A stretch of DNA of 64,000 nt from Podarcis pityusensis (taxonomy: Eukaryota), in assembly GCA_964106645.2 (NCBI GenBank), contig OZ067040.1. One strand, given 5' to 3'. How positions within the stretch are numbered: the stretch's first letter is position 1; the number at the start of each line of letters is the position of its first letter. Of this stretch, positions 15,099 through 55,654 are shown one piece after another. Under the pieces are notes generated by a model. The model made no database searches. It was not told the origin of the DNA and saw only the letters and a list, made by a program, of their open reading frames with translations. A program made the position numbers and the translations under genes.

Positions 15099-15100
<2 letters not shown>

Positions 15101-15161
<61 letters not shown>
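15101..15161. repeat. Compound microsatellite (CT)20(CA)10
   Basis: Direct reading. Confidence 0.95.
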
Positions 15162-18409: not shown

Positions 18410-18636
18410 CTCTGCTGCTTCTTGCTGTTGCTTTACCACTGAAGGATCAATTCCAGCTCCTTCTAGTTCTCTGATAAAATCCTGAGTATCCTTAATAGTG
18501 GCTATGAGAGCCATGTGATCACACCAGAACTTCTCTGCTAATTCCATTGCATCAAGCAATTTGGCCTCCCTTTCCTCAGCCAGGGTATGGATGTCTTCCC
18601 ACATAAAGACCATTTGATCCAACTTATCCTGAACCA
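18410..18636 (-). CDS. DST: DST exon ([13 protein letters not shown]...QQQEAAE), 227 nt, phase 1-0
   Basis: tag|TG acceptor, GAG|gtaggt donor. Confidence 0.92.
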
Positions 18637-18745
18637 CTAGGAAGCAAAATATACACGGGCAGGTATATAAAGTTCTGCTTCTTAATAGGTGCTTGTGGAA
18701 ACTTGTTCATGCATTTATTTTGAAATGTAAAATTTTGAAGTCTAC

Positions 18746-18977
18746 CTTTAGCAGATATGTCCTTATCAGCGCCTTCTGAACGGGCAATCATCTCTTCCCC
18801 ACGCTGCTTGAGGGTTTCATAGACTGGCTGAAGTTTTTCAAGGTCGACAGACACGTTCTTATTTTCACCGATCTGTTCTTTAATCTTTTCAACCTCAGCT
18901 GAGATGGAAGGTGGTTGCCTCAAACGTTCAACAATGCGTTCTAGGCTCTCAGTGGTCGAATCTATCTTGTCATGGAA
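18746..18977 (-). CDS. DST: DST exon ([29 protein letters not shown]...DISAK), 232 nt, phase 0-1
   Basis: tag|TTC acceptor, AAAG|gtagac donor, followed by a 109-nt intron. Confidence 0.92.
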
Positions 18978-20014: not shown

Positions 20015-20218
20015 CTGGGTAGACTGAGAAATGGCTTCGTCCAGTGCCTGAGCTCGCTTTTTGACATCTTCTTTAATTTGACTATAAAGGGCATCAGCTG
20101 CTACATACTTCTCTTGGATTGAAAAACCTTCTCGCGGGCTCAGCTCCAGAAGCTGAGGTCCAGTTTTATTCATCTTATCTATATGAGGCTTGTGTTCAGC
20201 AATCAACTCTCGCAGTTG
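20015..20218 (-). CDS. DST: DST exon ([18 protein letters not shown]...SQSTQ), 204 nt
   Basis: tag|CAA acceptor, CAG|gtaaca donor. Confidence 0.92.
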
Positions 20219-21722
20219 CTATAGCAAAGCAAAACACTTATCAGTATCTAACCCTTACATCGCCACATTCCAGCTGTCTGTGCGTCCAACACGTTCAGCT
20301 GGCAAGGTGGTCTAAATAAACAATCCCATCTGCATGCTAAGACAAAGTATAACTCATACTGGATATATCCATTTAGCCTTATTGTTGTGTTTTCAGCTCT
20401 AAGCATATAATGTTTCCTTTATACTAGGAAAAACAGCATTTTAGTCAACCAAGATATTTAAAAGAACAGAATCTGGGAAGCAAAACAATATAACTAGTCA
20501 AAAGTATTCAGCCAGTTGTCCGGCACTCTAAATGATTTATTAAGTAATGGCATTCCAGAAGATGCCAAATTGTTTAAATATGATTATAAATAGCTCGCTA
20601 GTGCTGGAGTGCTGGAGTGCTGTAACAAAAGCAAGCAAATCAAACCTCCAAGGTTACATCAAGGAATCATATTAAGATCATCCAATATTTTTGAGACTTG
20701 CAGAAAATGCTGTGCTTTAAAATGGAAGCAACACACTGTTGCACTTTGTTCAGCTCCTTTTAAAGCATAACTTAATGGAACAAACTGTTATAGTTTTAAA
20801 GTTCACTTTTAGAAGGTGCTTCCGGGTACTTTTTCTTTTGTTTGCCTCCAGTTTCTGTTGTATTCAGTGTGCCTTCACTACTACTCAATGAGGCTTTAGC
20901 TGATTTTTCTACCCAGAACACTCTCTATAATTAATCTCCAACTTTGCTAATATGAAGACAGCCATGTTTCTCTTTATTGCTGCACTCTGCCTAATCAGGA
21001 ACCTCTGTCTTTTGTTAAGGCTGGAGGCAGAACTGAGTAACTGCTGGACTTATGTTTCCAAAATTGGGGGTCAGCCATCACTTCTTTCCCCAAATTCCTG
21101 GGTACAAACTGAGTCTGCAGCACCTAATCCAATTCAGCCTGCAATCTCTCTTAAAACTGAATCTAAATGCAGATGTAGTGGCCACAACCATTTTTGTTTT
21201 TTGTTGCTGTCCCCCAACCCCTTTTCCCTATCCTCTGCTTTGCATAACATCCTGACTGATTAAGAGTTCTGGAGAACTCAAAAGATTGTGATATTTTGGC
21301 TGGTCCAAAACTGTGGTGTTTCCCAACTGTGGATTTTTGATTTTTTTTTTCTTAGGGAACACCACAGCTTGCTTTGCATTCCAGCTATTTTGGATACTGT
21401 TGAACATTTTCATTCCTTTTAAAAAATGCAAATAAATAAATAAATAAATAAATGAATGAATTAATTAGTGAATTAATTCACTAATCCGCTTTTCACAATG
21501 ACTGCTCTGCCTTGAGAATAGTTTTAAACTTGTGGTTATATTAAAATAGTAAGATTTTGTTTCGTAAAAAAATGGATTTTGGGTTGTTGTTGTTAACAGA
21601 GAGTAAAAAATATGTAAAATCTGATATTGGTTGGTTTGGTGAATGTGACATGCTAAAGAGAGGGCTGCACTTCTGTTGACCTTTGGAATTAACAGCATTT
21701 TGTAAGACGACTGCAAACTTAC

Positions 21723-21941
21723 CCGGTGCTCTTCTTGTTGTTGCTTTAGGGTTTCATATTCAAGAGCTGGTGCTGGAAGCTGTGATATTACTGTTTTTGT
21801 TTCCGTTAGCCATGGCCAAATCTCTTCATAAGTCTCCCAGAACTGACTGGCTAGAGACTGAGCTCTTTCTAGCTGCAGGTTCCTCTTAGAGTTCATTTGA
21901 CAGAGTGTATTATACTTCTGCAAGAGGTCTTCCAGCTTCTT
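21723..21941 (-). CDS. DST: DST exon ([10 protein letters not shown]...QQQEEHR), 219 nt
   Basis: tag|AAG acceptor, CGG|gtaagt donor. Confidence 0.9.
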
Positions 21942-22234
21942 CTATTAAAGAAATTACCAACAAACACCAGCATTTGGTTGGAGAAATTTACATTGTGGCA
22001 GGTGACTAGTCTTGCTATATAACAGGGTGGGCAATCTTTCAGCTCCTTAGGGGGCAAGTAGGTAGGTGCTTGGGGAAGGCATATCCACCAAGGAGTCGTG
22101 GATTCAGCATTCTGGGTCCAATTCTATGGAACTCCTTACTGGTTGATATCAGGAAGGCCCTCTTTCCTGTTGAATTTCGAGTGTCTACTGAAGGCCTTTT
22201 TAAATTTCAACAGGCATTTCAAGTAAATTTTAAG

Positions 22235-22520
22235 AAGATAAGATGAACCTGCTGGATCAGGCCAATGGTCCATCTAGTCACCCATCCTGTTCTCACAATG
22301 ACTTGTGGAAAACCAGCATGCAAGATTCAAGCACAAGAGCACTTTCCCCTCCTCTGGTTTCCAGCAACTGGTATTCAGAAGCATCACTGCCTCCAACTGC
22401 GCAGAGCACAGCCATTATGGCTAATAGCCATTGAGAGCTTTATCCTCTATGAATTTGTCTAATCCTCTTTTGAAGCCATGCAAGTTAGAGGCCATCACTG
22501 CCTCCTGCAAGTTCCACAGT
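22235..22520 (-). mobile_element. CR1 3'-end fragment
   Basis: Same family as 5686-5920 and 35865-36545. Confidence 0.65.
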
Positions 22521-22675
22521 TTAACCAAGCGCGGCATGATGCAGCCAACTTGAGGCAGCTTAAGCTTTCAAGGCACATTTCAGCCCCCCCTTACATAATC
22601 TTAGTGGGCTCCAGCAACATGGCTTGGGAATCCCTTACGCATGCAGATTTTCAAGTGCAAATCATGCTCCATTAC

Positions 22676-22783
22676 CTTCATGGTTTGTTTGTCCTCTTCT
22701 GTGCATGTCTTCATAATCTCATCCCCAGATGCAACAAGCTCTTCTATTGTATCCTTGTGTTTCAAAATCTCCATGGTAAATGC
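22676..22783 (-). CDS. DST: DST exon ([17 protein letters not shown]...KQTMK), 108 nt
   Basis: tag|GCA acceptor, AAG|gtaatg donor. Confidence 0.9.
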
Positions 22784-22928
22784 CTAATTACATAATACAA
22801 TATTCTGGTATTAGGAATATGAGGACACAGAGCAAAAGCCTGCACTATAATGGTTTGAAAATTAAATCATGGCAGAAAAAGTAATGGCCATTAATTATTG
22901 CATTACAGATGGAATCACATTTGTTCAC

Positions 22929-23048
22929 CTTTTGAACTTGTAGCTGAGCAATGGTCTGGTCACGTTCAAGCCTAATGTCACCCAGAGACATCAGTTTATT
23001 TTCTGTTTCCTCAACCCAGGCTAATTCAGTGTCGGCTGCTTGATCAAA
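22929..23048 (-). CDS. DST: DST exon ([16 protein letters not shown]...LQVQK), 120 nt
   Basis: tag|TTT acceptor, AAG|gtgaac donor. Confidence 0.9.
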
Positions 23049-26000
23049 CTAAAGAAAGCACAGAAAAAATAAAATAGCAATTCATAAAAAAAACTCCAAC
23101 TGGATGGGTAGAGGGTTTAAAATGGAAAAGATATTTCAGAAAAGACATTTGATAAGATTGAGAGGTGGGGATCATAGCTCAGTGGAAAGACTGCACTGGT
23201 TACATTTACACAGCCCCAAGTTTATCAGAACCTGTTTATATTTTGGATATCAGAACCAGTAAAACCCTAAATTGCAAAGCTGCCTCTAGGCCAGTTCTAG
23301 AATGGTGGGTATTTTAAGCTGCAATGCTAAGGGAGTTGCACATAGCTAAGAAAGTGTCTTGCAACACCTTTAGGAGGGGATAGAGGATGAAGCGATCAAG
23401 GTGTCAATGGCAACAAGATAGTGCCTGTAAACTTCCTTGCTAGACCATAAGCTTTCCACAGTTTGTGCATTTAGACCTGGCAGAGGAGATGTGGCCTCTT
23501 CACTTAAGAGATATGATGGAGGATGAGAGAAATCTGGGTATTCTTAAAGGGACAGGTAAGGCAAGGCAGAATAGTGCAACATGCTTCGGTGGCATTTGTC
23601 AAACATACAGAGTCAGAAAGGTAAAGATTGTAAGCAGTGGGCCAAATATCATTGAACAGCAAGTGTGATGTCTCTGTGCAAAGCTCAAAAGTATACGAAA
23701 TAAACACAGTGATCATTCACAACAGCACTAATTTGCAACGATATAATTTTCCTCCCTTTGCTGTGATGAGAGAAAAAAACTTTGCCTTGCATGAAATTGA
23801 AACAAGTAGCTTCAAGCTTGCTGATGAATTTTTGTTCAGCAGCTGCTGGCTAAAGTTTCCCTTTGAAGTTATTTTGTTGAAGAATAATGACTTTCAGGTC
23901 AGCAGCACAGTATCCTGGAATCAGTGCTAGTAGTTAAGAGTGTGAGGCTAGGTGGCTCGTTGCTGTGATTGAATATAATGCAGCTTCTTATAATACCCAC
24001 ACAGTTTATTCTTATTTTAATAAATTCTAGGGCTCTCTGTGACACTGAGGAGTATATCAAAATCAGCTTATTTCAGAAGTGTTACAAAGAGGAAGCAGGA
24101 AATGTCAGAGCCACATTATACTTTATACTTCAACCGGAATTCTCTGTCAAAATTCTCACAAACATCAAAGGTAATATTAATACTTGCTTTTCTTTAAACA
24201 TCTTTTGCTCTTGTCCATCTTTAAGATTATTTCCCTGCCTCAATAGAGAGATTATTTTTTAGTTAGGCTAGATCAATGGCATTAAAATCAATGGGCAGCA
24301 AAATAGGAATTGCTTCTTGGTAGAAGTTGACAGTCCAGTTGTGCGAACGCAAGTCATGAGTATCTATAGCATACACATATTTCCCCCCCCCCCGAAAATC
24401 TTATCCTTTCAGAGACCACTAGTGGATTTCTTTCAAATGTCATTTTCCAAACATGGAGAAGAGAGCAAGTTCGTGCCCACTGAGCTTCCTCCCACCATGA
24501 CAATACTACTGGTGGTACCCTGACTTCCACACTCTGGGGGAAGGTTCTAAAGAAGGGAGAGCCCGCTGTATGAACCTAGATTAGCACCCTGATCACAAAG
24601 GGTTCTGACAGAGGCAGAGCCTACACATAAAGCAGACTCCTCATTTGAGACCTTCCCCTTCAACATGCGGATGGCGCAGGGGAAGGGAAGCCAGGGTCTG
24701 TTATCCCACTAGGCACTGCTGTCATATGCAAATGTTCCATCCTCAACTTTGTTTCTTCGCTTGGGCTCACCAGACCAGTTCTCAACTGAACTTTGAGAGC
24801 CTTGGAGAACTTTGAGAGCCTTCCCCATCCTGGTTCTTTCCAAATGCTCTGAAATACAGTTTCCATCACTGGCCATACTGACTAGGGCTGCTGTGATCTA
24901 GAGTCCAAATTATATTGAGGGCACCAAGTTGGAGAAGGCTACTGTAGAGCAATTGGTATGCTCGTGAAGCACAATACTTGAATGGTCTAGTTTAAGCAGA
25001 CAAATAAATATACACAACAAGTTTCAACGTGAATCATGTTCCTAAAAGAAAGAGGTAGAGAAACTGATAAGGTGGATAACTTTCACTGGACCCAATCATG
25101 ATGGTGGGAGCACATGCGACCTTTAGAGGTCATCAAAATTCTTCATTATGTCTGATGCTTTCAACATATGCTGGTTGAAGAAGAAATAATCCTATTAAGC
25201 TGCTTGAGAAAGTTGATAATTTACATGTTTGTGGTAACAGAGTCACTTCCAACTGAAGGTGAAATTTAATGGATAAGCTGTCATATCTTATTCTTTAATT
25301 ATGAATCATGACTGAAAAGCAAGTTACGTGGGCTGAGGTTTCTCCATGTTTTTCATGAGTAATTCTTTATCACACTGTTTAATCTATTTGAAACAAGCCA
25401 CAAACATTTGCTGTCATCTCACATTTATAATCAGAGAAGGTACTTTTGGCCTGAACATTCTGTTTTGAAAGAGAGGCATATAAACTGAGTCATACTAAAT
25501 TAAAGGGCCAACAAATTAGAAGCTCTAAAAAAGAAAAAGAAAACCTTCGAACAAAACACTGATGTTTAAATTAAGACCATTTTAATACTGCCCACAACTG
25601 CAAATAATGTTTATATTTCCTGCAAAGCTGCATCCAGTGGCTACTGTACACATCTTTACTTCAACCATTCATTTACACAAGCTGATATATGACCTACATA
25701 GCAGCATAAATAATAAGTTACAGGGTTTGAGTTTACAATTCTTTCTGTACTGAAATTCCCACTGAGATCACTGCATGATGCTACTCGTAATGCCTCTCAG
25801 TATGAGACCGATCTGTAATTTCTGTGTCAACTAGAAGACAGATGGCTACAACAATGACTGGATTTGCTTTGGTCTAGGACTCATGTCTGACAACTATGAC
25901 CAAGCTCTTTTCAAGTTTGGCCCCAGTTCTTGCAAAGACTTAGCATGCATGTGCCAATAATATGAACAGCAGCCTTTTCTTTTGGTAGGGATTCCCAGAT

Positions 26001-26091
26001 ACACACCTGGATGTATTCCTAGAACAGATAAATATACATATTTTTTTCCCTATCACGCATAGACTGAAATGAGAATTATGGTCATTTTTAC

Positions 26092-26298
26092 CTGCTGCGA
26101 TCTGAAAATGGCAGCATCAATTTCTTCCACTTTCTGAGTTATAGTGTCGCTCACTAATCTGTACCGTTCGTTGTCTTCTGTGATCATTTTGTCTATCCCT
26201 TCCCTTGCTCTCCATGGCACCAGTTCAAGCAAAGCACTGCTGACTTCGTTAAGAGTGTCCAGTAAACTTTTATTATCTTTTGCTTCTTTTTTCAGTGC
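26092..26298 (-). CDS. DST: DST exon ([14 protein letters not shown]...FRSQQ), 207 nt
   Basis: tag|GCA acceptor, CAG|gtaaaa donor, [12 protein letters not shown] motif. Confidence 0.92.
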
Positions 26299-26889
26299 CT
26301 AAAAAGGAATATTTAAGGTAAACAAATTAAAAATAACACATTGGCGCAGAAACAAAATCTGCACAGCTCAAAGGTTCCACCCATGGGGCTTTTTTGGTTT
26401 TCTCCTTCTCCCATCTTCAGTTTTTTTTATTGAGTTTAAGAGTACATAGCTGAAATGCTACAGCTGCAAGCCAAAGCTATAAATATTGCTCTTTTCAACT
26501 TGGCTACCTTTGCTTTTGTTACAAGCATGCTTGGGACCCCCTAACCTCTCACACTATCAATATAAATAAATAAATAAACAAAGGACCTACCTACATGATG
26601 CTGACACAAACCTCTAAACTAATAAAAGATGATAGTGCAAAAGAACAATACCCCATCTCTCTCTCTCCACCTCCCTCCCCTACTCTGAAATGCATTCTTG
26701 AAATACGATAACGCTTCTTGCTTAGCCGGATGAAAGGATGTGCATGAGGTGTGAATATATGCAAAAACGTCCCAACTTCTGTGTAGCTGTACAAAGGGAA
26801 GTGTCACGCCTGTTGCTCCACCCACTTTTGCTGCTGGCATGTGGCCCCCGGAACGCTGTCCACAAGCAAACACAGCATTTTACGCTCAC

Positions 26890-27131
26890 CTTTTGTCTTT
26901 CTTGCGCTTGACTTAACTCTTCACCTTTGGGGACCTGCGCTTCGTACGACTGTAATTCCACCTCAACTTTATCCAGCCAAGTGCAGAGTTTCTCATGAGC
27001 TGACAGAAGCTGATCGGAAAGCTGTAGAGCCTGTTCTAAAGTCTTGGACACATCAGAACTCAGCTTCGTTATGTCCTTGTACCTTGTTTTAATGCCTTCC
27101 AATTTATCTTGAATTATGACAACTTCATCAC
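26890..27131 (-). CDS. DST: DST exon ([15 protein letters not shown]...QERQK), 242 nt, phase 1-0
   Basis: cag|GT acceptor, AAG|gtgagc donor. Confidence 0.92.
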
Positions 27132-27379
27132 CTGCAATGCGAAAGGGGTATTTAACACACTAATCATCTAAAGCGACCAGTATGTTTTTAGTGTTTAAAT
27201 CCACAGGTGAAAATAGAACAAATATTTCATCCTGATCAAGCTAGTTTTTCTTCTAAGCATGGAAGCTTCACTGTGCACATGCAACTTTAGCCCACCCCAC
27301 CCCATCCCTGTCTTATTTTAGATTGGGCTCCACCAAAATAAATCTAGGTCAAGCCTCAGCCAATCAGGATTCTCTAGGT

Positions 27380-27499
27380 CAGGGACGAGGAACCTATGGT
27401 CATCCAGATGTTGCTGGACTACAACTCCCATCTTTGCATGATTATTGGCCGGCTCTGATGGGAGATGGAGTCCAACAACATCTGGACTCCCTATCCCTG
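27380..27499. mobile_element. hAT-type MITE, related to 15328-15468
   Basis: CAGGG...CCCTG ends, internal palindrome ccagatgttgctggact / agtccaacaacatctgg. Confidence 0.7.
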
Positions 27500-28509
27500 T
27501 TCTATGCACTGGCTCACACCAATTAAATCATCAGTACAAGCTGGGAGCCCTAATGATTTCTGAGTAGGTGACAGGCAGTATGGTAGGCAGAGCTCAGTAT
27601 TCATGGCTCAGGGTTTTGCCTGCTCTGAAGTTCAGAATCAGTCTCTCTGAATATGGGAATAACATGATAGCATTCCAAGCTAAGGAGCAGATGGATGGCC
27701 TTTCCTTCTACCGCATGGCAACTTTATTTGACTATATCTTTAAAAAAACAACCAACTATGTCTTTTCTCCAATATACATGAAATTACACAAATATTGAGA
27801 TTTTGTGGTATGTACAGTAATTAAATTTAATCCATTAAAATAAGGCAGGTAATGAATCAACTGACAGAGCTAATTACAATTAAGAACATTTTCCTCTTTG
27901 AGTGGCTATGTCCATGCAATTGCCGTTATACAGAGAGTAAAAGTCAGAATTGAAACTGCACTGTTCGTTATACTATATGTTTACCTTTCAGTGAACAATT
28001 CAGGTTCTAATTCTGTAATTCTTCTCCTTCTCTCCTCCCTCCCTTCTTCCCAGCCCCAAACTATGTATATCTTGGAGAGTTCATGGAGTTAGAGACTGGA
28101 AAATTTAGAAGATGTTGGTCTACAAGCCAGACATGCTGTGTGCAATTGGAATGCAACTTTCCCACAGTACTAGGTCCACTGTGGGGGAAGCAGCCTCTCT
28201 CACAGCAATAGGTAGATTAATTACTCAGTCCATTTTTTAAAAAACTCTTTTTTTAACATTTACTACAACATTCTTCTATATAGCTGTTTAAGCAGTCTAT
28301 TTACTCCTTCCTTACATCTATTGGCTGAGATCCAAATGGACATGCATCATGATACCACACATTACAAACTGCTTTAAAATGCTGAAGTGCTACTCAAAAA
28401 TCATAAAATAAGGAACTATTCAAACTATAATCAAATTCTTCCAGAACCATGAATATTCAAGTTAGGGGTGAGTGATCATACTCTTGTTTTCAAGAGTTTC
28501 AACTGAATA

Positions 28510-28863
28510 GGTAAAGGTAAAGGGACCCCTGACCATTAGGTCCAGTCGTGACCGACTCTGGGGTTGCGGCGCTCATCTTGCTTTATTGGCCAAGGGAGCC
28601 GGCATACAGCTTCCGGGTCACGTGGCCAGCATGACTAGGCCGCTTCTGGCGAACCAGAGCAGCACGAGGAAACGCTGTTTACCTTCCCGCCAGAGTGGTA
28701 CCTATTTATCTACTTGCACTTTGATGTGCTTTCGAACTGCTAGGTTGGCAGGAGCAGGGATCGAGCAATGGGAGCTCACCCTGTCACAGGGATTCGAACC
28801 GCCGACCTTCTGATCAGCAAGTCCTAGGCTCTGTGGTTTAACCCACAGCGCCATCCACGTCCC
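28510..28863 (-). mobile_element. Full-length Sauria SINE
   Basis: Minus-strand tRNA-like head with A box (tggcgctgtgg) and B box (ggttcgaatcc), (ACCTTT)n tail, 12-bp TSD ttcaactgaata at 28498-28509 and 28864-28875. Confidence 0.92.
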
Positions 28864-30114
28864 TTCAACTGAATACTGTACTATAAAAAAGTCTCAAGCC
28901 ACTTTTAGTGTTAAGTTCAAAATTTTAAGAAGCTTCTTTTACAAATCCCTGTACTTCATTTACAAATCCCTGAACCCTAAGACTCCCCAAAATTTGGGGG
29001 TCATGTCCCTAGCAGAACAACATTTTGTGATGAGACCTGGAATGTGAATAAGAGAAATAATTTCCAGAGGCAAAGAAATGATCTATATGCTATTTCCATA
29101 AAGGATAAGGCCTTCCCTCTCCCTGACAGAAACGACACATGGAAAGTTAGTTTCCTGTCAGGCATTCTGGGATTTGTAGTCACTATTTTCAGCAGGAAAA
29201 TTTGCTCTGTCAAGGGCTGGTAGCATTTTTTCACTGTCTCTCCCTTTCCCAAATTGAAGTTTCTGTTCTATGGGACAACAACTCTTACCTTCGCTGCGGG
29301 TTCACCAGCCATAGTCCTGAGCTCATGCCAAGAAACACTGGGTCAGTACCTGAAGCACTGCCCCGGGAATTTGAATACGCTCCACTCCAGAACAGTAGCA
29401 GCTAACCACTTGTGCTGGCTCATAACATCACCTTACCCCATGGCCTCTCGGCTGATCAAGGAAGCAATGGACTAAGAGAGGAGAATGGGAAGGAGCAGAG
29501 GCCAAGTCTATTGCTCCCCACAACAATATTAAAACTGGATCCAGTGTGTGCTCAAAATCCAAAGAGGATGAAATCTGGAAGGCTATTTCACCATATATTC
29601 CCCAGCAGTAGAGTGAAATTCTCCAACTGTTCAAACATATGTTAAGAAATTCTCTTCTGAGAAATTTCCTATCAGCCCTAAATTTTCCCAATAGCTCTGC
29701 ACAGTAGACCAGTAGAATATTACAGCAGGAAGGCTGAGGCTGAGTTAATGGTTTGCCTAATGTCACCTAGGAAGTTCATGGCTGTGGTTAAATTTGAACT
29801 GAAGACTCCCAGCTCATGCTCTCAACCACTATGCTACACCAACTCTCATTACTGCTTTCTTTTCACATACCTGGGAGTAAGCTCTGCTGAGCTCAGTCAT
29901 GCTTACCTCTGAGCGGACAGGTATAGTATTACACTGTGAAACTTTATTACACACTGCACCCATAATTTTAAACTTATCCCATTACTTATGAACAAAAAAG
30001 TTTTTTTTAAATGAGCTTTAAAAAGGTTCCAGTAGGAGTCAATGAGCCCCCAAAAGTTTCTACTTTACTTGTCTTCATTGTCATAAATCATTAATTTCCT
30101 CATGGCTTTCTCAC

Positions 30115-30199
30115 CTGTTGTTTGTTTGAGAAGCTCCAAACCATTTTGTATAGCCTGATCAACATTTTGCTTTCTGAGCAGAATCTCTTCTTGCAGAGC
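30115..30199 (-). CDS. DST: DST exon ([28 protein letters not shown]), 85 nt, phase 0-1
   Basis: tag|GCT acceptor, ACAG|gtgaga donor. Confidence 0.9.
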
Positions 30200-30447
30200 C
30201 TAGAAAATTTTAGAATGCTTTTATCATCAGAGAAGTCATCATTTAAAATCTATAAAGCTGAAAGTCTATAAGCAGCCACTTATTCTCTCAGAGTGAGAAT
30301 TGGAGCAGGGTGCGGGGAGGATAAAGGCTTAAAAATAAATGATCAGGATACAGAATTAAAGGACTATTACAATAAAAAAATGAGAAGTAATATGAAATAG
30401 TGCTTAAAATGGTAAAATAAAATCAACAGAAAAAAAAATGGAAATAC

Positions 30448-30774
30448 CAGCATTTCAGTTTGTTGTTTCACAAGCAAGTCAGTATTGTAGTCTTGGACTG
30501 CCAGTTTGCTCAGTTTCTCATGTACTTCATTCAGCCAATTCATCAATTCAACTTCATCCTCTCCAAAAATCTGAGCATTGCAATAGGCTTGCTGTAGAAG
30601 CTGAGCCCTACTGCCACTTTTCTCTCGAATCTCAGTGTATTGGGCTTCTGAAGAATCTAGTTTCTCCTGCACCATTTCCTTGTCTTCCTTGGAGCTCAAT
30701 GCCTTTAAAGCCTGACCAATATTAATAGCTTGCTCCAAATTTTTGTTGCGAGTGGCGATGTCTTCCTCAAAGGC
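30448..30774 (-). CDS. DST: DST exon (AFEEDIATRNKNL...QQTEML), 327 nt, phase 0-0
   Basis: tag|GCC acceptor, CTG|gtattt donor. Confidence 0.9.
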
Positions 30775-31005
30775 CTAAATGAAGTTTTCAAAGTAGTAAG
30801 AAAAAGAAAAGAAAAACAAGCAAACAAAAAAACCCCCATAAAACCAAATATGAAAACAACTCAAGAACAACCAAAAGAATATAATTTTGATGGTAAAAGA
30901 AGCATATAAACAAAGTAATAAAAAAATGTGTTGGGGGGAATACTCCACTTTTGATTTACAAATCATAAAATAATTGCCGCAATGAAAGGCACATTAAGAT
31001 CTTAC

Positions 31006-31165
31006 TTTATGTTGAGAAATCTGCTGTTGTAGTTTGGAAGCCTGTGTTCCAATGGGTTCTGAATTTGAAAGCCTCTTTTCAGTGATGGTTAGCCACTCAA
31101 CCAGTGGTTCTAAAGTTTCATGGAATTGCTGTGCTACAGCTGAGATACCTTCCAACTGACGATTC
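31006..31165 (-). CDS. DST: DST exon ([18 protein letters not shown]...SQHK), 160 nt, phase 2-0
   Basis: tag|G acceptor, AAA|gtaaga donor. Confidence 0.92.
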
Positions 31166-31578
31166 CTACAATATGTGAAAACAAAGCACATTTTGCGGGA
31201 TGAGGGATGTATGAAATACTAAAAAGTTAAAATCAGCGCTTGGAAAGAACTACTTCGGTTTAATTATGTTCACTGAATTACTTCGAAAATCTCTGAACTA
31301 CACCTAAAAGTAGTTCCCATAATTGGAAGATTATGGGAGACATCCACTTTACTACAAGAATGGGTGATTATGTGATACTGATTTCCCCATATTATTTCAC
31401 TGAAATTTCTAAAAATAAAACTTGCAATATACTCAGAGCCATTTTCTCATTTAGCTTCAAATGCGAATCTTACAGTTAACTGGATGAAAATGTTGCTATA
31501 GTTTCAAATTAGTTTCTAATGCTGTATCAAGGAGTACACCCTACTGTACCCCTAAGTGAATGCAAACATTTCAGGTAC

Positions 31579-31745
31579 CTTGTTTCTGCTTTATCAAGCA
31601 GTGCATCCCATCTGCTATCCAGGAGGCTCAGCTGTTTCAAGATCTTCTCTTTATCAGCGGGCTCTGCTGACTCTGCAATTTTCTCCCCTTCACGCTTGAT
31701 TAGTTCAACAGTGGGTCTGCGGTCATCCAGCAATCTCTGGAGAAG
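31579..31745 (-). CDS. DST: DST exon ([15 protein letters not shown]...KAETR), 167 nt, phase 0-2
   Basis: cag|CTT acceptor, AG|gtacct donor. Confidence 0.92.
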
Positions 31746-34197
31746 CTGGAGACAAAATAATCAAAAATCAAATTGCCAGGAAATGACTGTTCACTACAAG
31801 GCTGTAAAAAGATTAAGAAGCAGATTCTTCAAGCTCTTGTTTACTGGCAAAAAGAGGCAGGCTTAAGGGAACAATTTTCTGAGATGGCAGGAAATTGTGA
31901 GGGTGCCAGCAGTCTTACAATGCAAGTGCCATAAATTGCATAAATAAGTAATTTCATTATGAGAGCGAGCAAACTGTGCCAATCTTAGCATCGGTTGTAA
32001 AGGTCTAGCATCCTTCCAAATGTTTTCATTCAGATTTCTTTTCAATGCTATCCTGGAAGCCTCTGGAAGGGCTACAGATATATATGCCTTATATGAGGTA
32101 TGATGTTGACATGTGCAGGAAAAGGGGGGAATCACAGTGGGACATTTTATAACACATGACAGTGCAGGGAACTTTTGGGGAAGCTTTTCCATTTTGGAAA
32201 AAGAAAGGATAGGAAATTTTCCGCTTCACATAAGAACCCTCCCCATCTTTTCAATACACTGTTGATGTTTGCAACTATCCACTGCAATCCAGAGAAATAT
32301 CTGTTTGTTTATATAGTGCTCACCTTTCAAAACACTTGTGGCCGCATTCAATAAGATGAACACAATTCAGGGCTTAATGATGTTCCTAAGACCAAATTAT
32401 TTTAATGGGGAATCAAACATGTTATAACTTTCTCTGGATTGTGTCCCAAATTTTCAGTACAAACATATGATCATTTCGGAGATTATTATGTTGCGAGCAG
32501 CTGCAACTTTGGATACTCACTTTGGCCAGACAACCTGAGGACTTGATTCACTAAGCTTCATGCAGTGCTCTTCCCTGAGGGTTGCCTTCTACGTTTCAGC
32601 CAAAAATCCCCCCTCCTCTCTCCTACTGCCTTTTGTTAAGACTGCTCAGAGAGCACAACTTCTCTCTGATGCTGTGCATGCTGTGACCTGCTCTTTCCTT
32701 GCTCATACATTTATTTTGAACAGGAAAGTAATTATGGATCTGGTTACAGAGTTTGATGTGCTGTATTTACTCCACAACTGCCAATTCAATATTTAATATG
32801 AACCTTCTTTCCCCACCCCTTTTAAGTGAGGGTCTAACAATCCATCAGCAACTGTGTTATAAACAATTGTTGAACAATCTGAAGCAGGGGTGTTTGACAT
32901 TATTAACTGAAGATACAGGCACAACAAGATGTTACCCTAAATCAAAACAGACTCTACAAAACTCTATAGAGACAGAAGTCAGGAAGTAAGGGGTGGAGCA
33001 GAAGCTGACACCAGGCACAGATTTCATCCCTTACTAACCCATATGTATAGGCAACTCGTATATGTCCACACTGAATGGCATATATGGGAAAAAGAGATTA
33101 ACTGAGAAGGGGTGGGGTGGAGGGTTGTCAAAATGATGAAGGAGGATTGAAGCCCTGACAAAATTTTGAACTTTATTTCAACTTAAGGGAGTAGCTCTAC
33201 AATGTTCTTCCCCCTGCCCCTTTTCACAATATCAGTGATGTCTTTTCAAACATCAGATTGCTTTTGATCCTCAAAATAATTGTTTTTGATGTGCATCCAG
33301 TGAAATGTACACGTGCATGAAATGATGCCAAGAACCAGCACAGATATTCCAGAGTTTTCCTTGCAATATATACAGAAAGCTGGTCCAATGAAATGATTGT
33401 TTACTCTGTGCTATACATGGCCTCTGTCCCCCCCAGTCTGCACCAGCTCCCCACATTTCCCAAAGAAGTGAAGAAAACCACATTTCCCCGGACAAAGGAT
33501 GCAATCAATGCCTGGATGGGAGGCTGCCTGGGAACTCCATTGAGTTCCATGGTGAAAGAAGAGATGGATATAAATGAGATACCAACTATTTGTTATATTT
33601 CTTGGTCACTTTTCTCATTGAATGAACCAAAGCAATTTAGGGCTCATCCCACACTTCCGCTTGCCTAGCCACTTTCCCCCAGGAAAACCCGCTGTCTACC
33701 GCTGAATCTGAGCCATACAAGTAAAAGGCAGGACTAATAGATCCTGTGCCACTAATATGCTACAGTCTGGATGCCTCTGTTAAAATGAGGGGAGAATTCC
33801 AAAATGAAAGTAGGAAAGGGCAAATCTTTAAAGAGAATTTCACAGATTGGGTTGAGAAAATTTGCCCTTCCCCTGAAAAAAGCCAAACACATCCCCTCAC
33901 AGGAGCATCCATGACAACCATCCTAAGTGATGGGATCACAGAGACTATGGAGATGTATTTTTTTCAAGTTCTTTTGCAACTGCACCTCTTATAGCGCATG
34001 TCTAATACATACTCAGCCACACTGTTATCCAGGCCACCACATGTTATTACTGTTATTAATTACCCACTATTCATCCTAAGGCCCCGGGTGGGTTACAACA
34101 TTAAAACACAGCTTTAAAAACAGTTTAAAATATCCCACTGAGCAGGTGACAGAGAAAATATAATTAATCTAAAGATAGATAAATAACTTCCACTCAC

Positions 34198-34368
34198 TTT
34201 CTGTTCCTGTATTTGGGCCTTCACAACTTTGAACTCAGCAGATGGAGGCTTCTGATTAGCCACAAGGTCTTCTGTGTCAATAAGCCAGCTAAGGATAGAT
34301 TCGACAGCATCTTGAAACCTCCCACAGTGGAGCAGTGCCTCTTGCAACTGAGCTGCTCTTTGAGCAAC
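34198..34368 (-). CDS. DST: DST exon ([20 protein letters not shown]...IQEQK), 171 nt
   Basis: tag|GTT acceptor, AAA|gtgagt donor. Confidence 0.92.
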
Positions 34369-35182: not shown

Positions 35183-35344
35183 CTTTTTGTTGAGAGTTTT
35201 CCATCTTGTGTTAACATCCTCAAGATCACGCTCAAGGTTATCAGTACTAGCATTTTTAGCAGCACTCTGAATAAGGCCTTGACCCAACCAATTTACCTCC
35301 TGTTGCTTAACCTGCAGTGGTTCAATCTTTTCCTTCTCGAATAC
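35183..35344 (-). CDS. DST: DST exon ([11 protein letters not shown]...TLNKK), 162 nt, phase 0-0; acceptor shared by canonical and putative internal isoform
   Basis: aag|GTA acceptor after a pyrimidine tract, AAG|gtacgt donor. Confidence 0.92.
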
Positions 35345-38065: not shown

Positions 38066-39448
38066 GTATAATGCTGTTTTTGCTGCACTCAATAGCACTA
38101 CCTATTTGCAGGACATTGTGGGATTTGTTAAGGGGGGGGGCATTATAAAGCAGAGTTCTGAGGAACCAAGTAGTTGAAAACAGCAAACAGGTCTTACCTT
38201 TCCCACAAAATAATATATAATATGGGCAAGTTCTCTTTACTTTAGAGAAATAAACAAGGGCTGGGATGCAAAAGCTAATTTACACATACCCAAGTGTTAG
38301 CTCAGTAGTATCTTTGGCAATCGAACAGGCAGGCACATGTACACACCCCAGGTTCCATAAACTACTTTTGAAATTCCCCTCTCTTTCAAAAGAAGCTTCC
38401 TGTGTTTGAGGTTGCTGTGTGAGAAACACAAGTCCTGCTCCAGTTTAGGCCCATGGAACTAGTAACGCAGTCCTTCAATCCAACTCTCTATTTCAGATGT
38501 TCATATATTTTTAAGACAATTCCATAGCAATCCAAACCGAGTTGTTCCCCTTGATTTGTTGTTTAGATACACATACCCACTCACAAAAGTAGGAATTGAG
38601 GCTAGAGTTTGCCAGAACAGCTTAGCAACAAGTCCTAAAATAACTCAAGACACAACCAGATCAGAGTGACCAAAAACAAAAAGAACAAAATTAAATTAAA
38701 GACTTCACAAGCTCCCCATGCTTATTACAAAGCTGTTTTCTACTTCCTTACTTCATTCACCGCTCAGTAAATGTTACAAGATCTCTTGTAAAAAATCCCC
38801 TACAACTTTAGGACTACTTTTTGGCATGAAGATGCAAGGAAATAATTTCAGTACGTGCAACAAGCCTTTAATCTGTGTACTTTGGAAACCGCAGCAATCT
38901 GAGCGTCGTTGTGTATACCTTTATGATGAACAGTGCAATCCTATACTTGTCAGCTCAGAAGAAGCATGCCCATTGGGTTTAATGGGCCTTACTCCCATGA
39001 AAGTGTGTACAGTATATGGCTGCAGCTGAAATCTGGTTAAATCTGAATAGGGAAGGCCTATCTGCCCTTGAATGGCACTGACTGCTTGAAACATAATTTG
39101 AGGAGAGGGGAGGAGGGGGTGCTGAACATCAATGCCTAGTGGAAGCATTCCAAATAAAGGGTAACAGGCACCATCTGGACAATAAATAGCCATGCAACCA
39201 AACAGCTGGAAGCAATCAACCCTGTCACAAACTGCCCTTAATCAATTTACTGAAGTGACCATCTCGCCAATTTCTGCCTTCTAATAACTTGTTGGGCAAA
39301 TGATTCTAAAGGAGCTCTTTGGGTAGATTAGCAAAATCTAAACATAAGCATTCATGATGCAATTACAGAAGAAAAAATAAATAAAATAAAAAAATAAAAA
39401 ATAACCCACCCTGCAGCATGAAAAGAATGCATTTAAGTTTGGAATTAC

Positions 39449-40735
39449 CTTATAAGACAACATGCCATTGCACACTGTATCCAAGGTTTGTTCTATTTGC
39501 ATGCCTGTAGTCCAAAAGCTGAATTCAGCGCTGATTGGATTTGCTTTTTGACAGCATGTGGTATTATTAGCCTCTAAAGCCTGACAGGACAATTCTATTG
39601 CACTTGTATGGGCCATATTACTTTCCTCAGTTTCATGCAAAATCACATATTTTACTAAGTCCATATCACTAGCATGTAAAGCTGCATCATCATCATAAAT
39701 ATCTATATCCTGAGTTGAAATATCCAGGAGGTCCTTTTCAATCATCTTGTCTTGGGTGTCTAATGGCTCATTAACTTCAGCGCTGTTCCTCACTTCCTCT
39801 TTGTCTAAAGTGAAATCATGTTCCCTCTCACCATCCTGGAGCCATTGGGGATGTGCTAAGAGGTCTTCTTTCAAATATGTCAGTGGACTGCAATGTCCAT
39901 CTCCTTCCCCTTGGTTGCCCTCATAGTTCCAGAAAGGTTCTTGCTCTATATGTGAAGCATTCTGCAATTTTACTCGACAGTGTCCACTGGTAGGGGCACT
40001 TCTGGAGGTAAGCAATGAAATTTGATGTTCACTACTAGAAATGGTAGGAGAAAATGATCCAAATTTACCCACAAACTGATTATCGTCTATGGAAGATATG
40101 CTCCTAAATTGAGTTTGTTCCCCTTCTAGCACATCTTGTTTTTCTTCTCTTTCTGCTGGAGGACTGCACAGACCAGAGTCATCTTCTTCGGAAGTTAGAG
40201 AACTAGTCCCACATTTGACCTGGCCTGTTGCTGCTAAGTCGGACACATCAACAGTCCCATCAAGTGAGCACTCACTTTTATTTGCATAGTCTGCAAAATT
40301 TGGTGGGACAAGCATCCTCCAGGATCTCCTATGTTCTTTCTTTTCTGTGTGATACTTTGCTTTGGGCAAGCCAGCTGTTCGAATGATGTCACTGTTCAGC
40401 TTAAGGGCATCAAAGATCATTTTTTCATCTAGCTTATTGGCTTCCCGTCCTCTGAGTTCAAAGACACTAGAGGAGGAGAGGGCACCATTGGAGCACAATG
40501 TACTAAGGTCCAGTGTTCTATGACTATACGGCAAAGTCCGATCTGAGAAATGCCTGGAGGAGAGGCTGCCTTTAGAACCTGAGTCAATCTGTTCATTCAG
40601 CCGCACTGTGTCATAGATTGACCTCTGGGGAACATAACAGTCCTCAATATTTATATCCTCTTCTTCTTCATCACCTTTTCCTACACAAGGAGGATTCTGG
40701 CGCAAACAGTCTGGCCTGCTCAGCGGCTTCCCCAT
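39449..40735 (-). CDS. DST: Putative alternative first coding exon of DST (KIAA0754-like, 429 aa, MGKPLSRPDCLRQNP...MLSYK)
   Basis: 1,287-nt open frame, ATG in good Kozak context (gcagaaATGG), in-frame stop upstream, AAG|gtaatt phase-0 donor matching the phase-0 acceptor at 35344. The N-terminus resembles human KIAA0754 inside MACF1 (recalled). Confidence 0.8.
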
Positions 40736-41279
40736 TTCTGCAGGAATTAACAGATCTAGCACTGCTGCGAGGCTACCTTATTGGAGACACGCAACACACA
40801 TAAAGTAAAAATTAAAATAAAGTAATAGAAAAGCAGTTTTTAAAAAGTACAGTAAACTTGCCCTCAGCAGAAAGATGCTTACATACTAAAACACAGGAAA
40901 TAATTTATGAGGCGGTTAAGGTCGTAATCAGTGCATCTGTGTAAGTTTACCTGGCTGTGATTTAAAACATTTCTCCCCCTGCCCCTAAAATATAAAGTGC
41001 TTGAGCTGAAGGGGGTGGGTGGGGAGAGGGGAAACAAAAAACCCCCCACACCTTTTAATATTTTAAAATACTAACTCAACGCACAAAGACACCAACAAAA
41101 TGTACAAACCCCCCAAACCCCAGGAAAATCTTTAAGTGGCTCAAAAGACTCAGAACTTCCCACATAGCATTTCATTTCGATTTTTAGGTCAAAATGTGTG
41201 TCTTAAATCTCCAGATTAAGTCTTCAAAATGAATCAGCATTATAGCAGGCAGCACGCTATATTCAGGAGGTGACAGATT

Positions 41280-42350
41280 AACTGTAATCCATTTAAATGG
41301 CTTGCAGAATTCCATCTCCTTTATAAATAAGCCATGTTGTGGACGCTTTTGAAGAAAAACAAACCAGAAGAGCTGTGGACTGTGGAGACCAAGGCACAGA
41401 GAAAGGCTTCAGGAAAAACAAAGGTACATCCAGAGTTGTAATAATAATAATAATAATAAAAGAAGAAGCTTTCCCCCTTTTTTGGCAGCAGCTATAAATA
41501 ACCTCGATTCAAAAGGCAGTTTATTCCTTGCTTCCTTAAAGCTTCTCTGTGGTGAGTTCAGAAGTTCCATGGGAAACACAACAGTTTTCTGAGGAGCCAG
41601 ACCAATGAAATAATAATAATAATACAAAAAAGCAACGGAACAGAATTAGTAGAAAAAGAAACTTTCCCCCCAGTTTCTCTCGCAGAACACATTCCTTGAA
41701 AGTTGTTGTCCTGTTTTAAGGCAACACAGCAGGAAACTAGAGCATTTCTTCCTCCACTCCGGCACAAAGGCACAACAGATTCACATTCTGTTTAAATTCA
41801 GCAGGACTTTTTTTTTTGCATAAACGGTGGCTACAAGAGCATGGTCACTGTTTTCATCTCCGTCTTGAAGCGCAGCTGTAGCGAAGAAGGCATTAAAAAG
41901 AGCTCACAACAATAAACGCTCACATGTCCTGCCCAGCGCAGCTGATAAGCTTTCCGGCTCTCCCTGGTTTCTTATGGTCTGACAGGCATCCCTCCCAATA
42001 GTGAGCTTAAAAGAAACGCCCTTTGCTATTCTTTAGGCAACATCTGCTCCTATCGCATTCGCTCCCTGAGTATTATTCCAACCGAGCATTAGGAGGTGCC
42101 TGACCTCTTAGCTCTTCCCCCTTACGCTTCCTGCCCCACATGACTTTACTTAGCCATCTTTCACTTTTACTGTTTGTCTTGTCTCTGAATGAGGCTGAGC
42201 CTTTTCAGGGGGAGGTGCACAAAGGAGCAAGTTCCTGTCTGCAGCACTCCTGCATATCGGAGTCTGTGCTCTGTAATTCTGGAGGAAAAGAGGGTGGGTG
42301 GGTGGGTGGTGGCTCACAAGCAGAATGGAAAAACCGGTGCTAATTAGTTC
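41280..42350 (-). promoter_or_regulatory. Candidate internal promoter/enhancer upstream of the KIAA0754-like exon
   Basis: No repeat recognised here; locally more CpG. MEF2-consensus sites at 41321-41330 and 41492-41501, MCAT cattcct near 41690, E-boxes cagctg at 41873 and 41939, tgataa at 41943. Confidence 0.35.
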
Positions 42351-53658: not shown

Positions 53659-55133
53659 CTTAAATACGTTCAGCTGCTGATTTATCATCTCAATTTCCAT
53701 TCCAACAGAACCCTGTGACTCTTCATGCTCTTCAACTTCCCCAAGCAGTTTAGAAAACCCCTTTAGTTTACTGTAGAACTCTTCAACGCGGCTAATAGTC
53801 CCTTCAATCTGTTCATCTCTGGCTTTTGCTCTGTCTAGCAACTTGTTGCACTGCTTATTTAAAGCCTCCAAGTCCCTTTTTATACCTGCAAGATCTGGAG
53901 AAGCTTCAGCTTCATTTGCTAGCATCATTTTGCAGGTATTATTTGCATTTTCATTACTGGTTATGAGTTCCTCCAACTTTTTCAGGAAAGTTTTTATATC
54001 CTTTCGCTGTGACTGCAGTGTGACAAGATCCCTACCCACAGAATCCATGCTGTCCAATTCATCGTCGAACTCTGCAAACTGAGAAAACATCTCTCGGATG
54101 CTGTTTTGGAAATGGCCAATTCCCTGGAGTTTAGTCTCCAGAAATGAACATTTATCTTCAACCTGCTGACTGATGGTGCTGAATTCTTCTTCTAACGTTT
54201 CTGCCTGCAACAAGAGGTCAGAGACACCTGATGAATCTGAAGCATCTGCCACCAGTTCTTGGGCAAGCTTTTTTGTAAGGTCCACTTGAGCCTTCACGGC
54301 CTGGAGTGTTTTCTGCTGAGCCTGCATAATCGTCAAGTGTTTGTTACTGTAAGTCTGGGGTTTGAGAGAATCGTGTGTTTCCAGCTGTTCTCTGGCATTC
54401 TTCAGCTGCTCTTCAACATCCTTTGATGACTCTTGAAACTCTTTCAGTCTCTGAGACATCTTTTCCAGACAATCTCTCTTAGCATGCAGTTGTTCTGTGA
54501 CTATATCCATGTTCTGGATCAGCAGTGTCTTCTCCTCTTCAATAATGTCTTTGTCTGTCTGACAGGCACTGAGTAATGTCTCAGCTGCATTACTTAATAG
54601 CTCCACCAACCCTTGGTGTTTGTCTAGGTCCTTCTGCCAGCTCTTCACCTGAGCGATGGAATTCTCTAGCCGAGCAGGATCTATGCTCATTTCTATTTGA
54701 GAGATATTGCTTTGGCATTTCGCTATCCAGGGTTGTAGGTTTTCTACATGCTCTCTGTATCTAAGGGCTTTTTCCAAACAATCATTTAATTTATCTTGCC
54801 TTTCTTTAACTTGCTTGTTCATTTCATCCCAGTTACCTCTGAGCAAGTTCAGCTGGGCCTGCAGCTCAGCCTTCTCTGCTCCCTGAGTCTTTTGGAGTAA
54901 ACTTTCGCCTTCTGTGATGATTTTTTCATAAGAACCAGTCTGGTCAGACAAGACAGCCTTGAACTCTTTCTGATCATCAATTAATGTCCACAGAGACTCC
55001 AGCTTGGTAGAGATGGGACACGGCTGATTCTGTTCTTCCTTCTTTTTGTCCAGCCAGGCCTGAAAGTCCTTAGACATTTGCTGGAACTGATGAGAACTAA
55101 CATAAGTTGACTGAAGTTGCTCAATGTGATTGC
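53659..55133 (-). CDS. DST: DST large rod exon ([10 protein letters not shown]...QQLNVFK), 1,475 nt, phase 1-0
   Basis: cag|GC acceptor, AAG|gtaaga donor, 491 codons of spectrin repeats. Confidence 0.94.
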
Positions 55134-55654
55134 CTGCAGAAGACAAACAAACAAACAAACAAACAAAAGTTATTAAAATCCGTGTCTTTGAGTGGCTTCT
55201 AACTAGGATTTTGGTTGATGTTATTTCAATCAAGGAGAAACATTATGTTATAGGAAAATGCACCCTATTGCAATTTGAGATGTTTTATTAAACATTATTC
55301 TTCATTGGAGCTTGTTAGCTGATGGGTTTATTGAAGACCACCAGCTTGGAAAATAATAGTATTGCAGCCTAAAATAATAACCCCTTGATAATAATAATAA
55401 TCCCTTGACAACAAGAGATTCTTGAGGGTGGGGAACTAAACAGGTAACCAGGATAGTATGATCACTAGCGCCACTATAAACATCACAAACATAAACGACA
55501 TGCACTATGAAAAGTAAAGCTTGCAGTAATCCCTCAACAGTCATTGAGATAAAATGCTTCCAAATATCACTGCCAGTCCTGTTACAACTTTACAGAACTC
55601 CTGTTGGGACTCCCTTGTTGAGTCTGAAACAACGCCCCCCCCCCCCCCAAGTAA

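What the first reader, a model, noticed from the sequence alone, without database searches (positions are those of the whole stretch)
39449..40735. Hidden KIAA0754-like first exon predicts an internal, headless short dystonin isoform
Seen: a 429-codon non-spectrin, non-transposon open frame inside the largest DST intron, on the DST strand. It has a good-Kozak ATG, an upstream in-frame stop, and a phase-0 donor (TATAAG|gtaatt) that joins the phase-0 exon [10 protein letters not shown] at 35344, the same acceptor used by the canonical exon ending LNVFK. The two candidate acceptors just upstream of the ATG are out of phase with the canonical upstream donor, so it cannot be a simple in-frame cassette. 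Recalled knowledge: human KIAA0754, nested in a MACF1 intron, begins with a very similar block (MGKPLSRPDCLR...IEDCYVPQRSIYDT.R.NEQID, KKLDE..IFDALKL, RRSW...PPNF). Inference: both vertebrate spectraplakins keep an ancient internal start. It would give a protein with a new N-terminus, the distal spectrin repeats (1,383 aa in this window) and presumably the EF-hand/GAR tail, but no actin-binding or plakin domain. I do not know of a functional description for DST, though automated annotations may already list it.
Basis: partly seen in the sequence, partly recalled or inferred. Interest (0 to 1): 0.9.

Follow-up and report, generated by a model that had tools for sequence, protein, structure and literature searches.

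The report
Alternative first exon of short dystonin
A conserved 429-codon exon inside a dystonin intron starts a shorter dystonin that lacks the actin-binding head; it is real, but gene catalogues of many vertebrates already list it, although I found no study of what it does.

Summary
On the minus strand there is an ATG at 40735, 429 codons, a phase-0 donor after 39449 and an in-frame stop 45 nt upstream.

The frame is under purifying selection. dN/dS is 0.04-0.12 over codons 1-160 and 0.35-0.59 over the rest.

Seventeen catalogued or assembled proteins carry exactly the predicted junction. They include ~2,430-2,690-aa "dystonin" models from lizard, snake, bird and mammals. Three ~10-kb mRNA contigs from separate runs of a non-human mammal carry the full 2,690-aa reading frame. 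Their private 1.05-kb leader holds no upstream DST exon.

Similarity to KIAA0754 is real (E 4e-41). That protein is now named "MACF1, isoforms 6/7". A hagfish protein has the same head joined to spectrin repeats.

It is not new. Many annotations hold it, and a 2017 review mentions a conserved extra exon that is probably this one. I found no functional study.

The same scan noted the MACF1 paralogue elsewhere in this genome (s1-729617).

Verdict: already known, moderately low interest.

The parts
41936..42235 (-). Conserved non-coding block, proposed promoter and transcription start region of the short isoform (inferred)
   Evidence: Identity to three other lizards is 85-92%, against 45-70% further upstream. 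It holds the highest local G+C and CpG o/e of the intron: 0.47 and 0.66 at 41800-42099. Extrapolating the mammalian leader alignment puts position 1 of the mRNA at about 41.95-42.05 kb.
40736..41935 (-). Proposed 5' leader, contiguous with the coding part (inferred)
   Evidence: Positions 363-708 of the mammalian mRNA leader align to window 41576-41210 (E 4e-17), collinear with the ATG. Identity among lizards is 70-96%. There are 23 upstream ATGs in 42050-40736, against 14 in the mammalian leader.
41186..41335 (-). Most conserved element of the leader
   Evidence: Identity among four lizards is 90-96%, and it is alignable to the mammalian mRNA leader. No Rfam family matches.
39449..40735 (-). 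Coding part of the alternative first exon, 429 codons from ATG to phase-0 donor
   Evidence: Identity is 81% to Elgaria LOC134397954 and 75% to the head of the Phrynosoma short dystonin.
40256..40735 (-). Conserved N-terminal module (codons 1-160), shared with KIAA0754 / MACF1 isoforms 6/7 and with hagfish
   Evidence: dN/dS is 0.04-0.12. Invariant residues in 30 sequences from both paralogues include M1-S6, P8, C10, C17, Y34, P36-T43, L102-E104 and S138-W139. AlphaFold2 gives a mostly disordered model with two short helices at 40-51 and 104-111, mean pLDDT 56.
40163..40180 (-). DSGLCS motif (residues 186-191), specific to the dystonin paralogue
   Evidence: DSGxxS is present in 164 of 170 DST-type heads and 0 of 173 MACF1-type heads. 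The likeness to the beta-TrCP degron consensus is from memory and was not tested.
39443..39448 (-). Donor gtaatt after the last codon
   Evidence: AAG|GTAATTC is conserved in four lizards. Other species' proteins switch to the next exon at the same point.
35183..35344 (-). First shared spectrin exon (54 codons), the acceptor used by both starts
   Evidence: for both boundaries.
197..34368 (-). Chain of 23 further spectrin-repeat exons of the short isoform found in the window
   Evidence: Collinear local tblastn of the Phrynosoma, Pseudonaja and Haliaeetus short dystonins, at 60-99% identity.
53659..55233 (-). Canonical upstream dystonin exon (ends LNVFK, phase 0). The short isoform skips it.
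   Evidence: No such sequence is present in the mammalian mRNA leader.

Best explanation
Window 40735-39449 (minus strand) is the coding part of an alternative first exon of dystonin, transcribed from its own promoter inside the 18.3-kb intron. I infer a start near 42.0 kb, followed by a leader of about 1.2 kb that is contiguous with the coding part. After 429 codons the exon splices in phase 0 to the spectrin exon at 35344.

The product is about 2,600-2,700 aa. It has a private, largely disordered head, roughly the distal half of the spectrin rod, and (beyond the window, by homology) the EF-hands and the GAS2/GAR microtubule-binding tail. It has no calponin-homology or plakin domain.

It is the dystonin counterpart of the KIAA0754 exon of MACF1 (now 'MACF1 isoforms 6/7'). 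It dates back at least to the common ancestor of hagfish and jawed vertebrates.

Shown here: the open frame, the splice signals, selection, homology, and the junction in other species' models and mRNA contigs.

Inferred: use of the junction in this species, the start site, and the function. The proposed function is a microtubule-binding rod held somewhere by its head. The invariant MGKPLS, C10 and C17 fit N-myristoylation plus palmitoylation, so the anchor may be a membrane.
For: - Frame and signals.
- Homologues: 47 representative homologues, nearly all matching from their residue 1.
- Nesting: nested on the same strand in genes whose products of 7,902 and 7,883 aa carry CH, plakin, plectin and spectrin domains in Elgaria and Pogona.
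- Exact junction: 17 proteins, including Phrynosoma 2,428 aa, Gekko 1,055 aa, Pseudonaja 2,613 aa, Laticauda, Haliaeetus 2,687 aa, bat, whale and pig.
- Transcripts: three runs each hold a ~10-kb contig with an uninterrupted 2,690-aa frame (Spectrin, EF-hand, GAS2). Over the stretch they share, their ~1.05-kb leaders are identical, and no upstream DST exon is visible in any of them.
- Leader: it aligns to window 41576-41210.
- Selection: dN/dS is 0.04-0.12 for codons 1-160 and 0.24-0.40 overall. The donor is conserved.
- Collinearity: short dystonins map collinearly onto the window down to position 197.
- Paralogue and age.
- Literature.
Against:
- RefSeq models the ORF in Elgaria and Pogona as a stand-alone 487-aa protein that reads through the donor.
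- About 0.8 kb after the donor is also conserved among lizards. That could be the 3' end of such an unspliced transcript.
- The leader is long and rich in upstream ATGs, which is awkward for scanning ribosomes.
- There is no CpG island in the lizard intron.
- The start site is only extrapolated.
- Several of the models with the junction are automated predictions, and not all are independent of each other.
Confidence: 0.85

Rival explanations
1. The exon mainly makes a stand-alone protein of about 465 aa from an unspliced transcript. This transcript reads through the donor and ends in the intron. It would be the dystonin analogue of MACF1 'isoform 7' / the original KIAA0754 cDNA. It may also coexist with the long form.
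For: RefSeq LOC134397954 (Elgaria) and LOC140708235 (Pogona) are contiguous 487-aa read-through frames. Many 430-540-aa read-through products are in the protein collection, and a human cDNA product of 424 aa is listed. Sequence after the donor is 72-88% conserved among lizards down to about 38.6 kb, and ATTAAA signals lie at 38983 and 38872.
Against: The read-through tails differ in length and sequence between species, so they are not under coding constraint. The donor, its phase and the exon end are conserved. Most short products come from genomic contigs, where an ORF caller must read through; L004 is collinear with the window on both sides. Full-length spliced mRNA contigs exist.
Confidence: 0.12
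2. It is an internal 'poison' cassette of full-length dystonin. It would be spliced in through the cag| acceptor 2 nt before the ATG, and it would break the frame.
For: The acceptor-like cctgcag| is at 40738. Inclusion after the phase-0 upstream donor gives a stop after 5 codons.
Against: That AG is missing in Elgaria and Pogona. The mammalian mRNA contigs carry a private leader with no spectrin sequence. A poison exon needs no 429 conserved codons, nor dN/dS of 0.04-0.12.
Confidence: 0.02
3. It is a chance or decayed open frame without function.
For: There is no Pfam domain, and the predicted structure is mostly disordered.
Against: It is conserved from hagfish to mammals with invariant motifs. 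It is under purifying selection. The chance expectation is about 1e-8 by my estimate.
Confidence: 0.01

Closest known systems
Short 'dystonin' models and transcripts that start MGKPLSRPDCLR. Examples: Phrynosoma platyrhinos JD844_023976 (2,428 aa), Pseudonaja textilis A0A670YVC8 (2,613 aa), Haliaeetus albicilla 'dystonin-like' (2,687 aa), Rhinolophus dystonin (2,689 aa), and mRNA contigs L001-L003.
   Same: The head is orthologous (75% identity to Phrynosoma). The junction to the VFEK/VFQK exon is the same. The downstream exon chain is the same, mapped in the window. The listed domains are Spectrin, EF-hand and GAS2.
   Different: Nothing of substance. In this species the junction and the C-terminal third (outside the window) were not seen.
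[quoted passage not shown]
   Same: The first ~160 residues are homologous at 44-57% identity (E about 1e-39 to 1e-41), with identical motifs. It is also a start nested inside the rod region of a spectraplakin gene. Long forms run on into spectrin repeats, EF-hands and GAS2.
   Different: It is a paralogue in a different gene. The MACF1 exon is about 1,000-1,400 codons with a long low-complexity extension, against 429 here. The DSGxxS motif is found only in the dystonin type.
Other headless or head-reduced spectraplakin isoforms in the literature: BPAG1e/DST-e, MACF1c, MACF1-4, and Shot C and D types
   Same: They also lack part or all of the actin-binding domain, through an alternative start (PMC4914211; bioRxiv 10.1101/122010).
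   Different: MACF1c, MACF1-4 and DST-e keep the plakin domain or carry plakin/plectin repeats. This isoform starts deep in the spectrin rod and has a private head. The MACF1 isoform review and a recent dystonin isoform paper do not describe it. Only the figure legend in Voelzmann et al. 2017 mentions 'an additional exon ... conserved between dystonin and MACF1'.

Membership tests
First exon of the short dystonin isoform (orthologues) | Head homologous over its whole length to annotated short dystonins | tested here: met
   Identity over 429 aa is 75% to Phrynosoma, 81% to Elgaria, 59-61% to snake and eagle, and 51-55% to mammals.
First exon of the short dystonin isoform (orthologues) | Lies on the gene's strand in the intron between the ...LNVFK exon and the VFEK... 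exon of dystonin | tested here: met
   The same nesting is seen in Elgaria and Pogona inside 7,902- and 7,883-aa CH/plakin/plectin/spectrin genes.
First exon of the short dystonin isoform (orthologues) | Phase-0 GT donor at the conserved exon end, compatible with the next exon | tested here: met
   AAG|GTAATT is present in four lizards. The proteins switch exon at that point.
First exon of the short dystonin isoform (orthologues) | The junction is used in RNA of this species | not testable with these tools
The junction is seen in mRNA contigs of a non-human mammal and in models of other squamates.
First exon of the short dystonin isoform (orthologues) | Product continues into EF-hands and the GAS2/GAR tail | not testable with these tools
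   The window ends within the rod, at residue ~1812 of 2,687. Orthologues list EF-hand and GAS2.
KIAA0754 / MACF1 isoforms 6/7 head | Conserved N-terminal ~160-residue module with its motifs | tested here: met
KIAA0754 / MACF1 isoforms 6/7 head | Encoded inside MACF1, with a ~1,000-codon extension | tested here: not met
   The host gene is dystonin and the exon is 429 codons. It is a paralogue, not a member.
N-myristoylated (dually acylated) proteins | Met-Gly start with Ser/Thr at position 6, plus nearby Cys | tested here: met
   MGKPLS, C10 and C17 are invariant in 30 sequences from both paralogues and hagfish. The motif rule comes from general knowledge of NMT substrates.
N-myristoylated (dually acylated) proteins | Lipid actually attached | not testable with these tools
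   No paper links KIAA0754 with myristoylation in the library searched.

The most novel reading that the evidence does not exclude
The short isoform is a lipid-anchored (myristoyl-Gly2 plus palmitoyl-Cys) microtubule linker that is independent of actin. Its head has been conserved since the vertebrate ancestor. Its abundance is set by a dystonin-specific DSGxxS phosphodegron and by a leader that is deeply conserved and rich in upstream ATGs. It would then be a fourth functional class of dystonin, beside a, b and e. It would be hit only by DST mutations distal to this intron, which could explain part of the genotype-phenotype spread in DST disease.
Probability: 0.25. Interest if true: 0.6.

Novelty: already known. 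Interest (0 to 1): 0.3.

Why it matters
Work on dystonin is framed around isoforms a, b and e with N-termini 1, 2 and 3. In the papers I could search, I found no functional study of a rod-plus-tail isoform with its own promoter and a head conserved from hagfish to mammals. Mutations, knock-outs and antibodies aimed at the 5' half of DST would leave this product intact, whereas 3' lesions would remove it. For this scan the result is mainly a calibration point.

Tried and rejected
- **Read laying.** No read evidence was obtained. I sent none of those letters to any search afterwards, and local alignments used the window cut beside them. The query was the Phrynosoma protein 1-1200 by reference, with words and scoring limited to residues 1-429.
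- **Joined model.** The joined spliced model of this window was never built or searched. Exons were handled by reference, one at a time.
- **Pfam.** Nothing was found on the 429 aa.
- **Rfam.** Nothing was found on 38400-42600.
- **AlphaFold2.** The model of residues 1-175 gave no fold (pLDDT 56, pTM 0.18), so no fold search was made.
- **Lizard contig L004.** It proved to be genomic, collinear with the window, and says nothing on splicing.
- **CpG island.** None was found in 40.7-53.6 kb.
- **Mammalian leader.** Only its middle part aligns to the window. Its G+C-rich 5' end does not.
- **Literature.** Searches for a described short dystonin, or a KIAA0754-MACF1 isoform paper, gave only the one figure legend.
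- **Human entries.** A human cDNA product and a human MACF1 fragment appeared in hit lists. The cDNA product was used once, locally, to show that L001-L003 are not human (80% identity). Nothing else was done with either.
- **Small runs.** The 80-150-million-letter runs that hold 55-76% of the exon's words could be RNA or capture libraries. This stayed unresolved.

Full report
**Observation**

The minus strand holds an open frame at 39338-40762. Reading the sequence gives these features:
- ATG at 40735, with G at -3 and G at +4.
- An in-frame TAA at 40780-40778.
- 429 codons, then TATAAG|gtaatt. The last exon base is 39449 and the donor is phase 0.
- If the donor is read through, the frame ends 36 codons later.

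The next spectrin exon begins at 35344 behind ctgaag| in phase 0 and runs to 35183. The canonical upstream exon ends LNVFK|gtaaga at 53659 in phase 0. Pfam finds nothing in the 429 aa. By my own estimate from base composition, the chance expectation of such a frame in this window is about 1e-8.

**Is it a gene part?**

A search of 1.84 billion representative proteins gave 47 homologues, 43 of them below E 1e-10. Nearly all match from their own residue 1. The best is Elgaria LOC134397954, at 81% identity over all 429 residues. Others come from whale shark, sturgeon, carp, vole, coelacanth and hagfish. No hit outside vertebrates was seen.

A word-indexed search added orthologues from lizards, snakes, turtles, birds, a marsupial, elephant and naked mole-rat. 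In Elgaria and Pogona the ORF lies on the same strand inside genes whose products of 7,902 and 7,883 aa carry CH, plakin, plectin and spectrin domains. That gene is dystonin.

Against three other lizards, dN/dS is 0.04-0.12 for codons 1-160, 0.35-0.59 for the remainder, and 0.24-0.40 overall. The donor AAG|GTAATTC is identical in all four. The frame is therefore translated and constrained, most strongly in its first 160 codons.

**Is it spliced to the rod?**

From then on I worked beside those places. I never built the joined model and handled exons one by one by reference.

Homology answers the question indirectly but consistently. Seventeen proteins switch from the exon end directly to the VFEK/VFQK exon (examples):
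- Phrynosoma, 2,428 aa
- Gekko, 1,055 aa
- Pseudonaja, 2,613 aa
- Laticauda
- Haliaeetus, RefSeq 'dystonin-like', 2,687 aa
- naked mole-rat, vole, bat, meerkat, whale, pig and titi monkey

Their listed domains are Spectrin, EF-hand and GAS2, without CH or plakin.

The strongest evidence is three contigs of 9.9-10.1 kb from three separate sequencing runs. Each carries an uninterrupted 2,690-aa frame with this head, about 1.05 kb of leader and 0.8-1.0 kb of trailer. These can only be spliced mRNA. The three leaders are identical over the stretch they share. They begin G+C-rich and are closed in all frames, and I saw no upstream dystonin exon in them. The transcript therefore starts at its own promoter. 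These contigs are not human: their head is 80% identical to the human cDNA product and 83-84% identical to rodent-like sequences.

The Phrynosoma, Pseudonaja and Haliaeetus proteins map collinearly on the window from 40735 down to 197. For the eagle protein this reaches residue 1812, which is 1,381 aa of rod after the exon.

**Start site and leader**

The cag| acceptor 2 nt before the ATG is absent in Elgaria and Pogona, so it is unlikely to be used.

Among four lizards, the 1.7 kb upstream of the ATG is conserved at 70-96%. There are peaks at 42235-41936 (85-92%) and 41335-41186 (90-96%), whereas sequence beyond 42.5 kb falls to 45-70%.

Positions 363-708 of the mammalian mRNA leader align to window 41576-41210 (E 4e-17), collinear with the ATG. 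I infer a single first exon of about 2.5 kb. Its start extrapolates to roughly 41.95-42.05 kb, at the edge of the conserved block. That block also has the highest local G+C and CpG content of the intron, though it is no CpG island.

The leader carries many upstream ATGs, 14 in the mammal and 23 in the window. This complicates simple scanning. No Rfam family matches.

**The head**

An alignment of 30 heads from both paralogues and hagfish shows these invariant residues: M1-G2-K3-P4-L5-S6, P8, C10, C17, Y34, P36-T43, N47-E48, I50-D51, L102-D103-E104, D109, L111-K112 and S138-W139.

AlphaFold2 predicts disorder with two short helices, at 40-51 and 104-111 (pLDDT 56). The head looks like a string of short binding motifs, not a folded domain.

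MGKPLS with nearby cysteines fits the N-myristoylation and palmitoylation pattern. That rule is general knowledge, and the same idea appears in sibling note s1-733768. It was not tested.

Residues 186-191, DSGLCS, occur in 164 of 170 dystonin-type heads and in none of 173 MACF1-type heads. This resembles the beta-TrCP degron consensus, recalled from memory and not tested.

**Comparison with what is known**

The likeness to KIAA0754 is confirmed (hyena homologue E 4e-41; many more). [quoted passage not shown] Long MACF1 forms of 3,100-3,400 aa that begin with it carry spectrin repeats, EF-hands and GAS2.

A hagfish protein of 1,899 aa has the head followed by spectrin repeats. The internal start is therefore at least as old as the vertebrates.

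In the literature I found one mention, a figure legend in Voelzmann et al. [quoted passage not shown] I cannot see the figure, so identity with this exon is probable, not proven.

The MACF1 isoform review PMC4914211 lists six isoforms without it. The dystonin paper PMC9365387 works with a, b and e only. No paper links KIAA0754 with MACF1 isoforms or with myristoylation.

**Rivals**

- **Stand-alone read-through protein.** This is how RefSeq models the ORF in Elgaria and Pogona. About 0.8 kb after the donor is conserved among lizards, with two ATTAAA signals. However, the read-through tails are not conserved as protein. I give it 0.12 as the main product. It may well coexist with the long form.
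- **Poison cassette or chance frame.** These are excluded.

**Verdict**

The thing is already catalogued widely, though I found no functional study of it. Novelty is 'already known' and interest is 0.3. The same scan noted the MACF1 counterpart elsewhere in this genome (s1-729617), which I did not check.

Noticed in passing
window 45492-47837 (-): An uninterrupted 781-aa open frame with a reverse-transcriptase domain (RVT_1, E 1e-38). It lies in the same intron and on the same strand as dystonin, and looks like a young LINE copy.
   Followed up: partly
window 41186-41335 (-): A 150-nt element in the proposed leader is 90-96% identical among four lizards and still alignable to a mammalian mRNA leader. 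No Rfam match. Function unknown.
   Followed up: partly
window 41936-42235 (-): A 300-nt block is 85-92% identical among lizards and lies where the mRNA start extrapolates. It is a candidate promoter.
   Followed up: partly
window 40163-40180 (-): The DSGLCS motif is conserved in 164 of 170 dystonin-type heads and absent from 173 MACF1-type heads. It resembles a beta-TrCP phosphodegron.
   Followed up: partly
window 38640-39448 (-): The intron just after the donor is 72-88% conserved among lizards, then conservation drops. ATTAAA lies at 38983 and 38872. It could be splicing control, or the 3' end of an unspliced transcript.
   Followed up: partly
window about 38050-38100: A (CA)n microsatellite, seen as THTHTH / CVCVCV in the ORF translations.
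   Followed up: no
runs X1-X14: Very small runs (80-150 million letters) from five studies hold 55-76% of the exon's words. That is too little data for whole-genome assembly, so they are RNA or capture libraries.
   Followed up: no
L001-L003, first ~150 nt; vole model P0009 residues 1-38: The G+C-rich 5' end of the mammalian mRNA leader translates to the same peptide that a vole gene model uses as its start. The 5' end of the leader is therefore conserved between two rodent-like species.
   Followed up: partly
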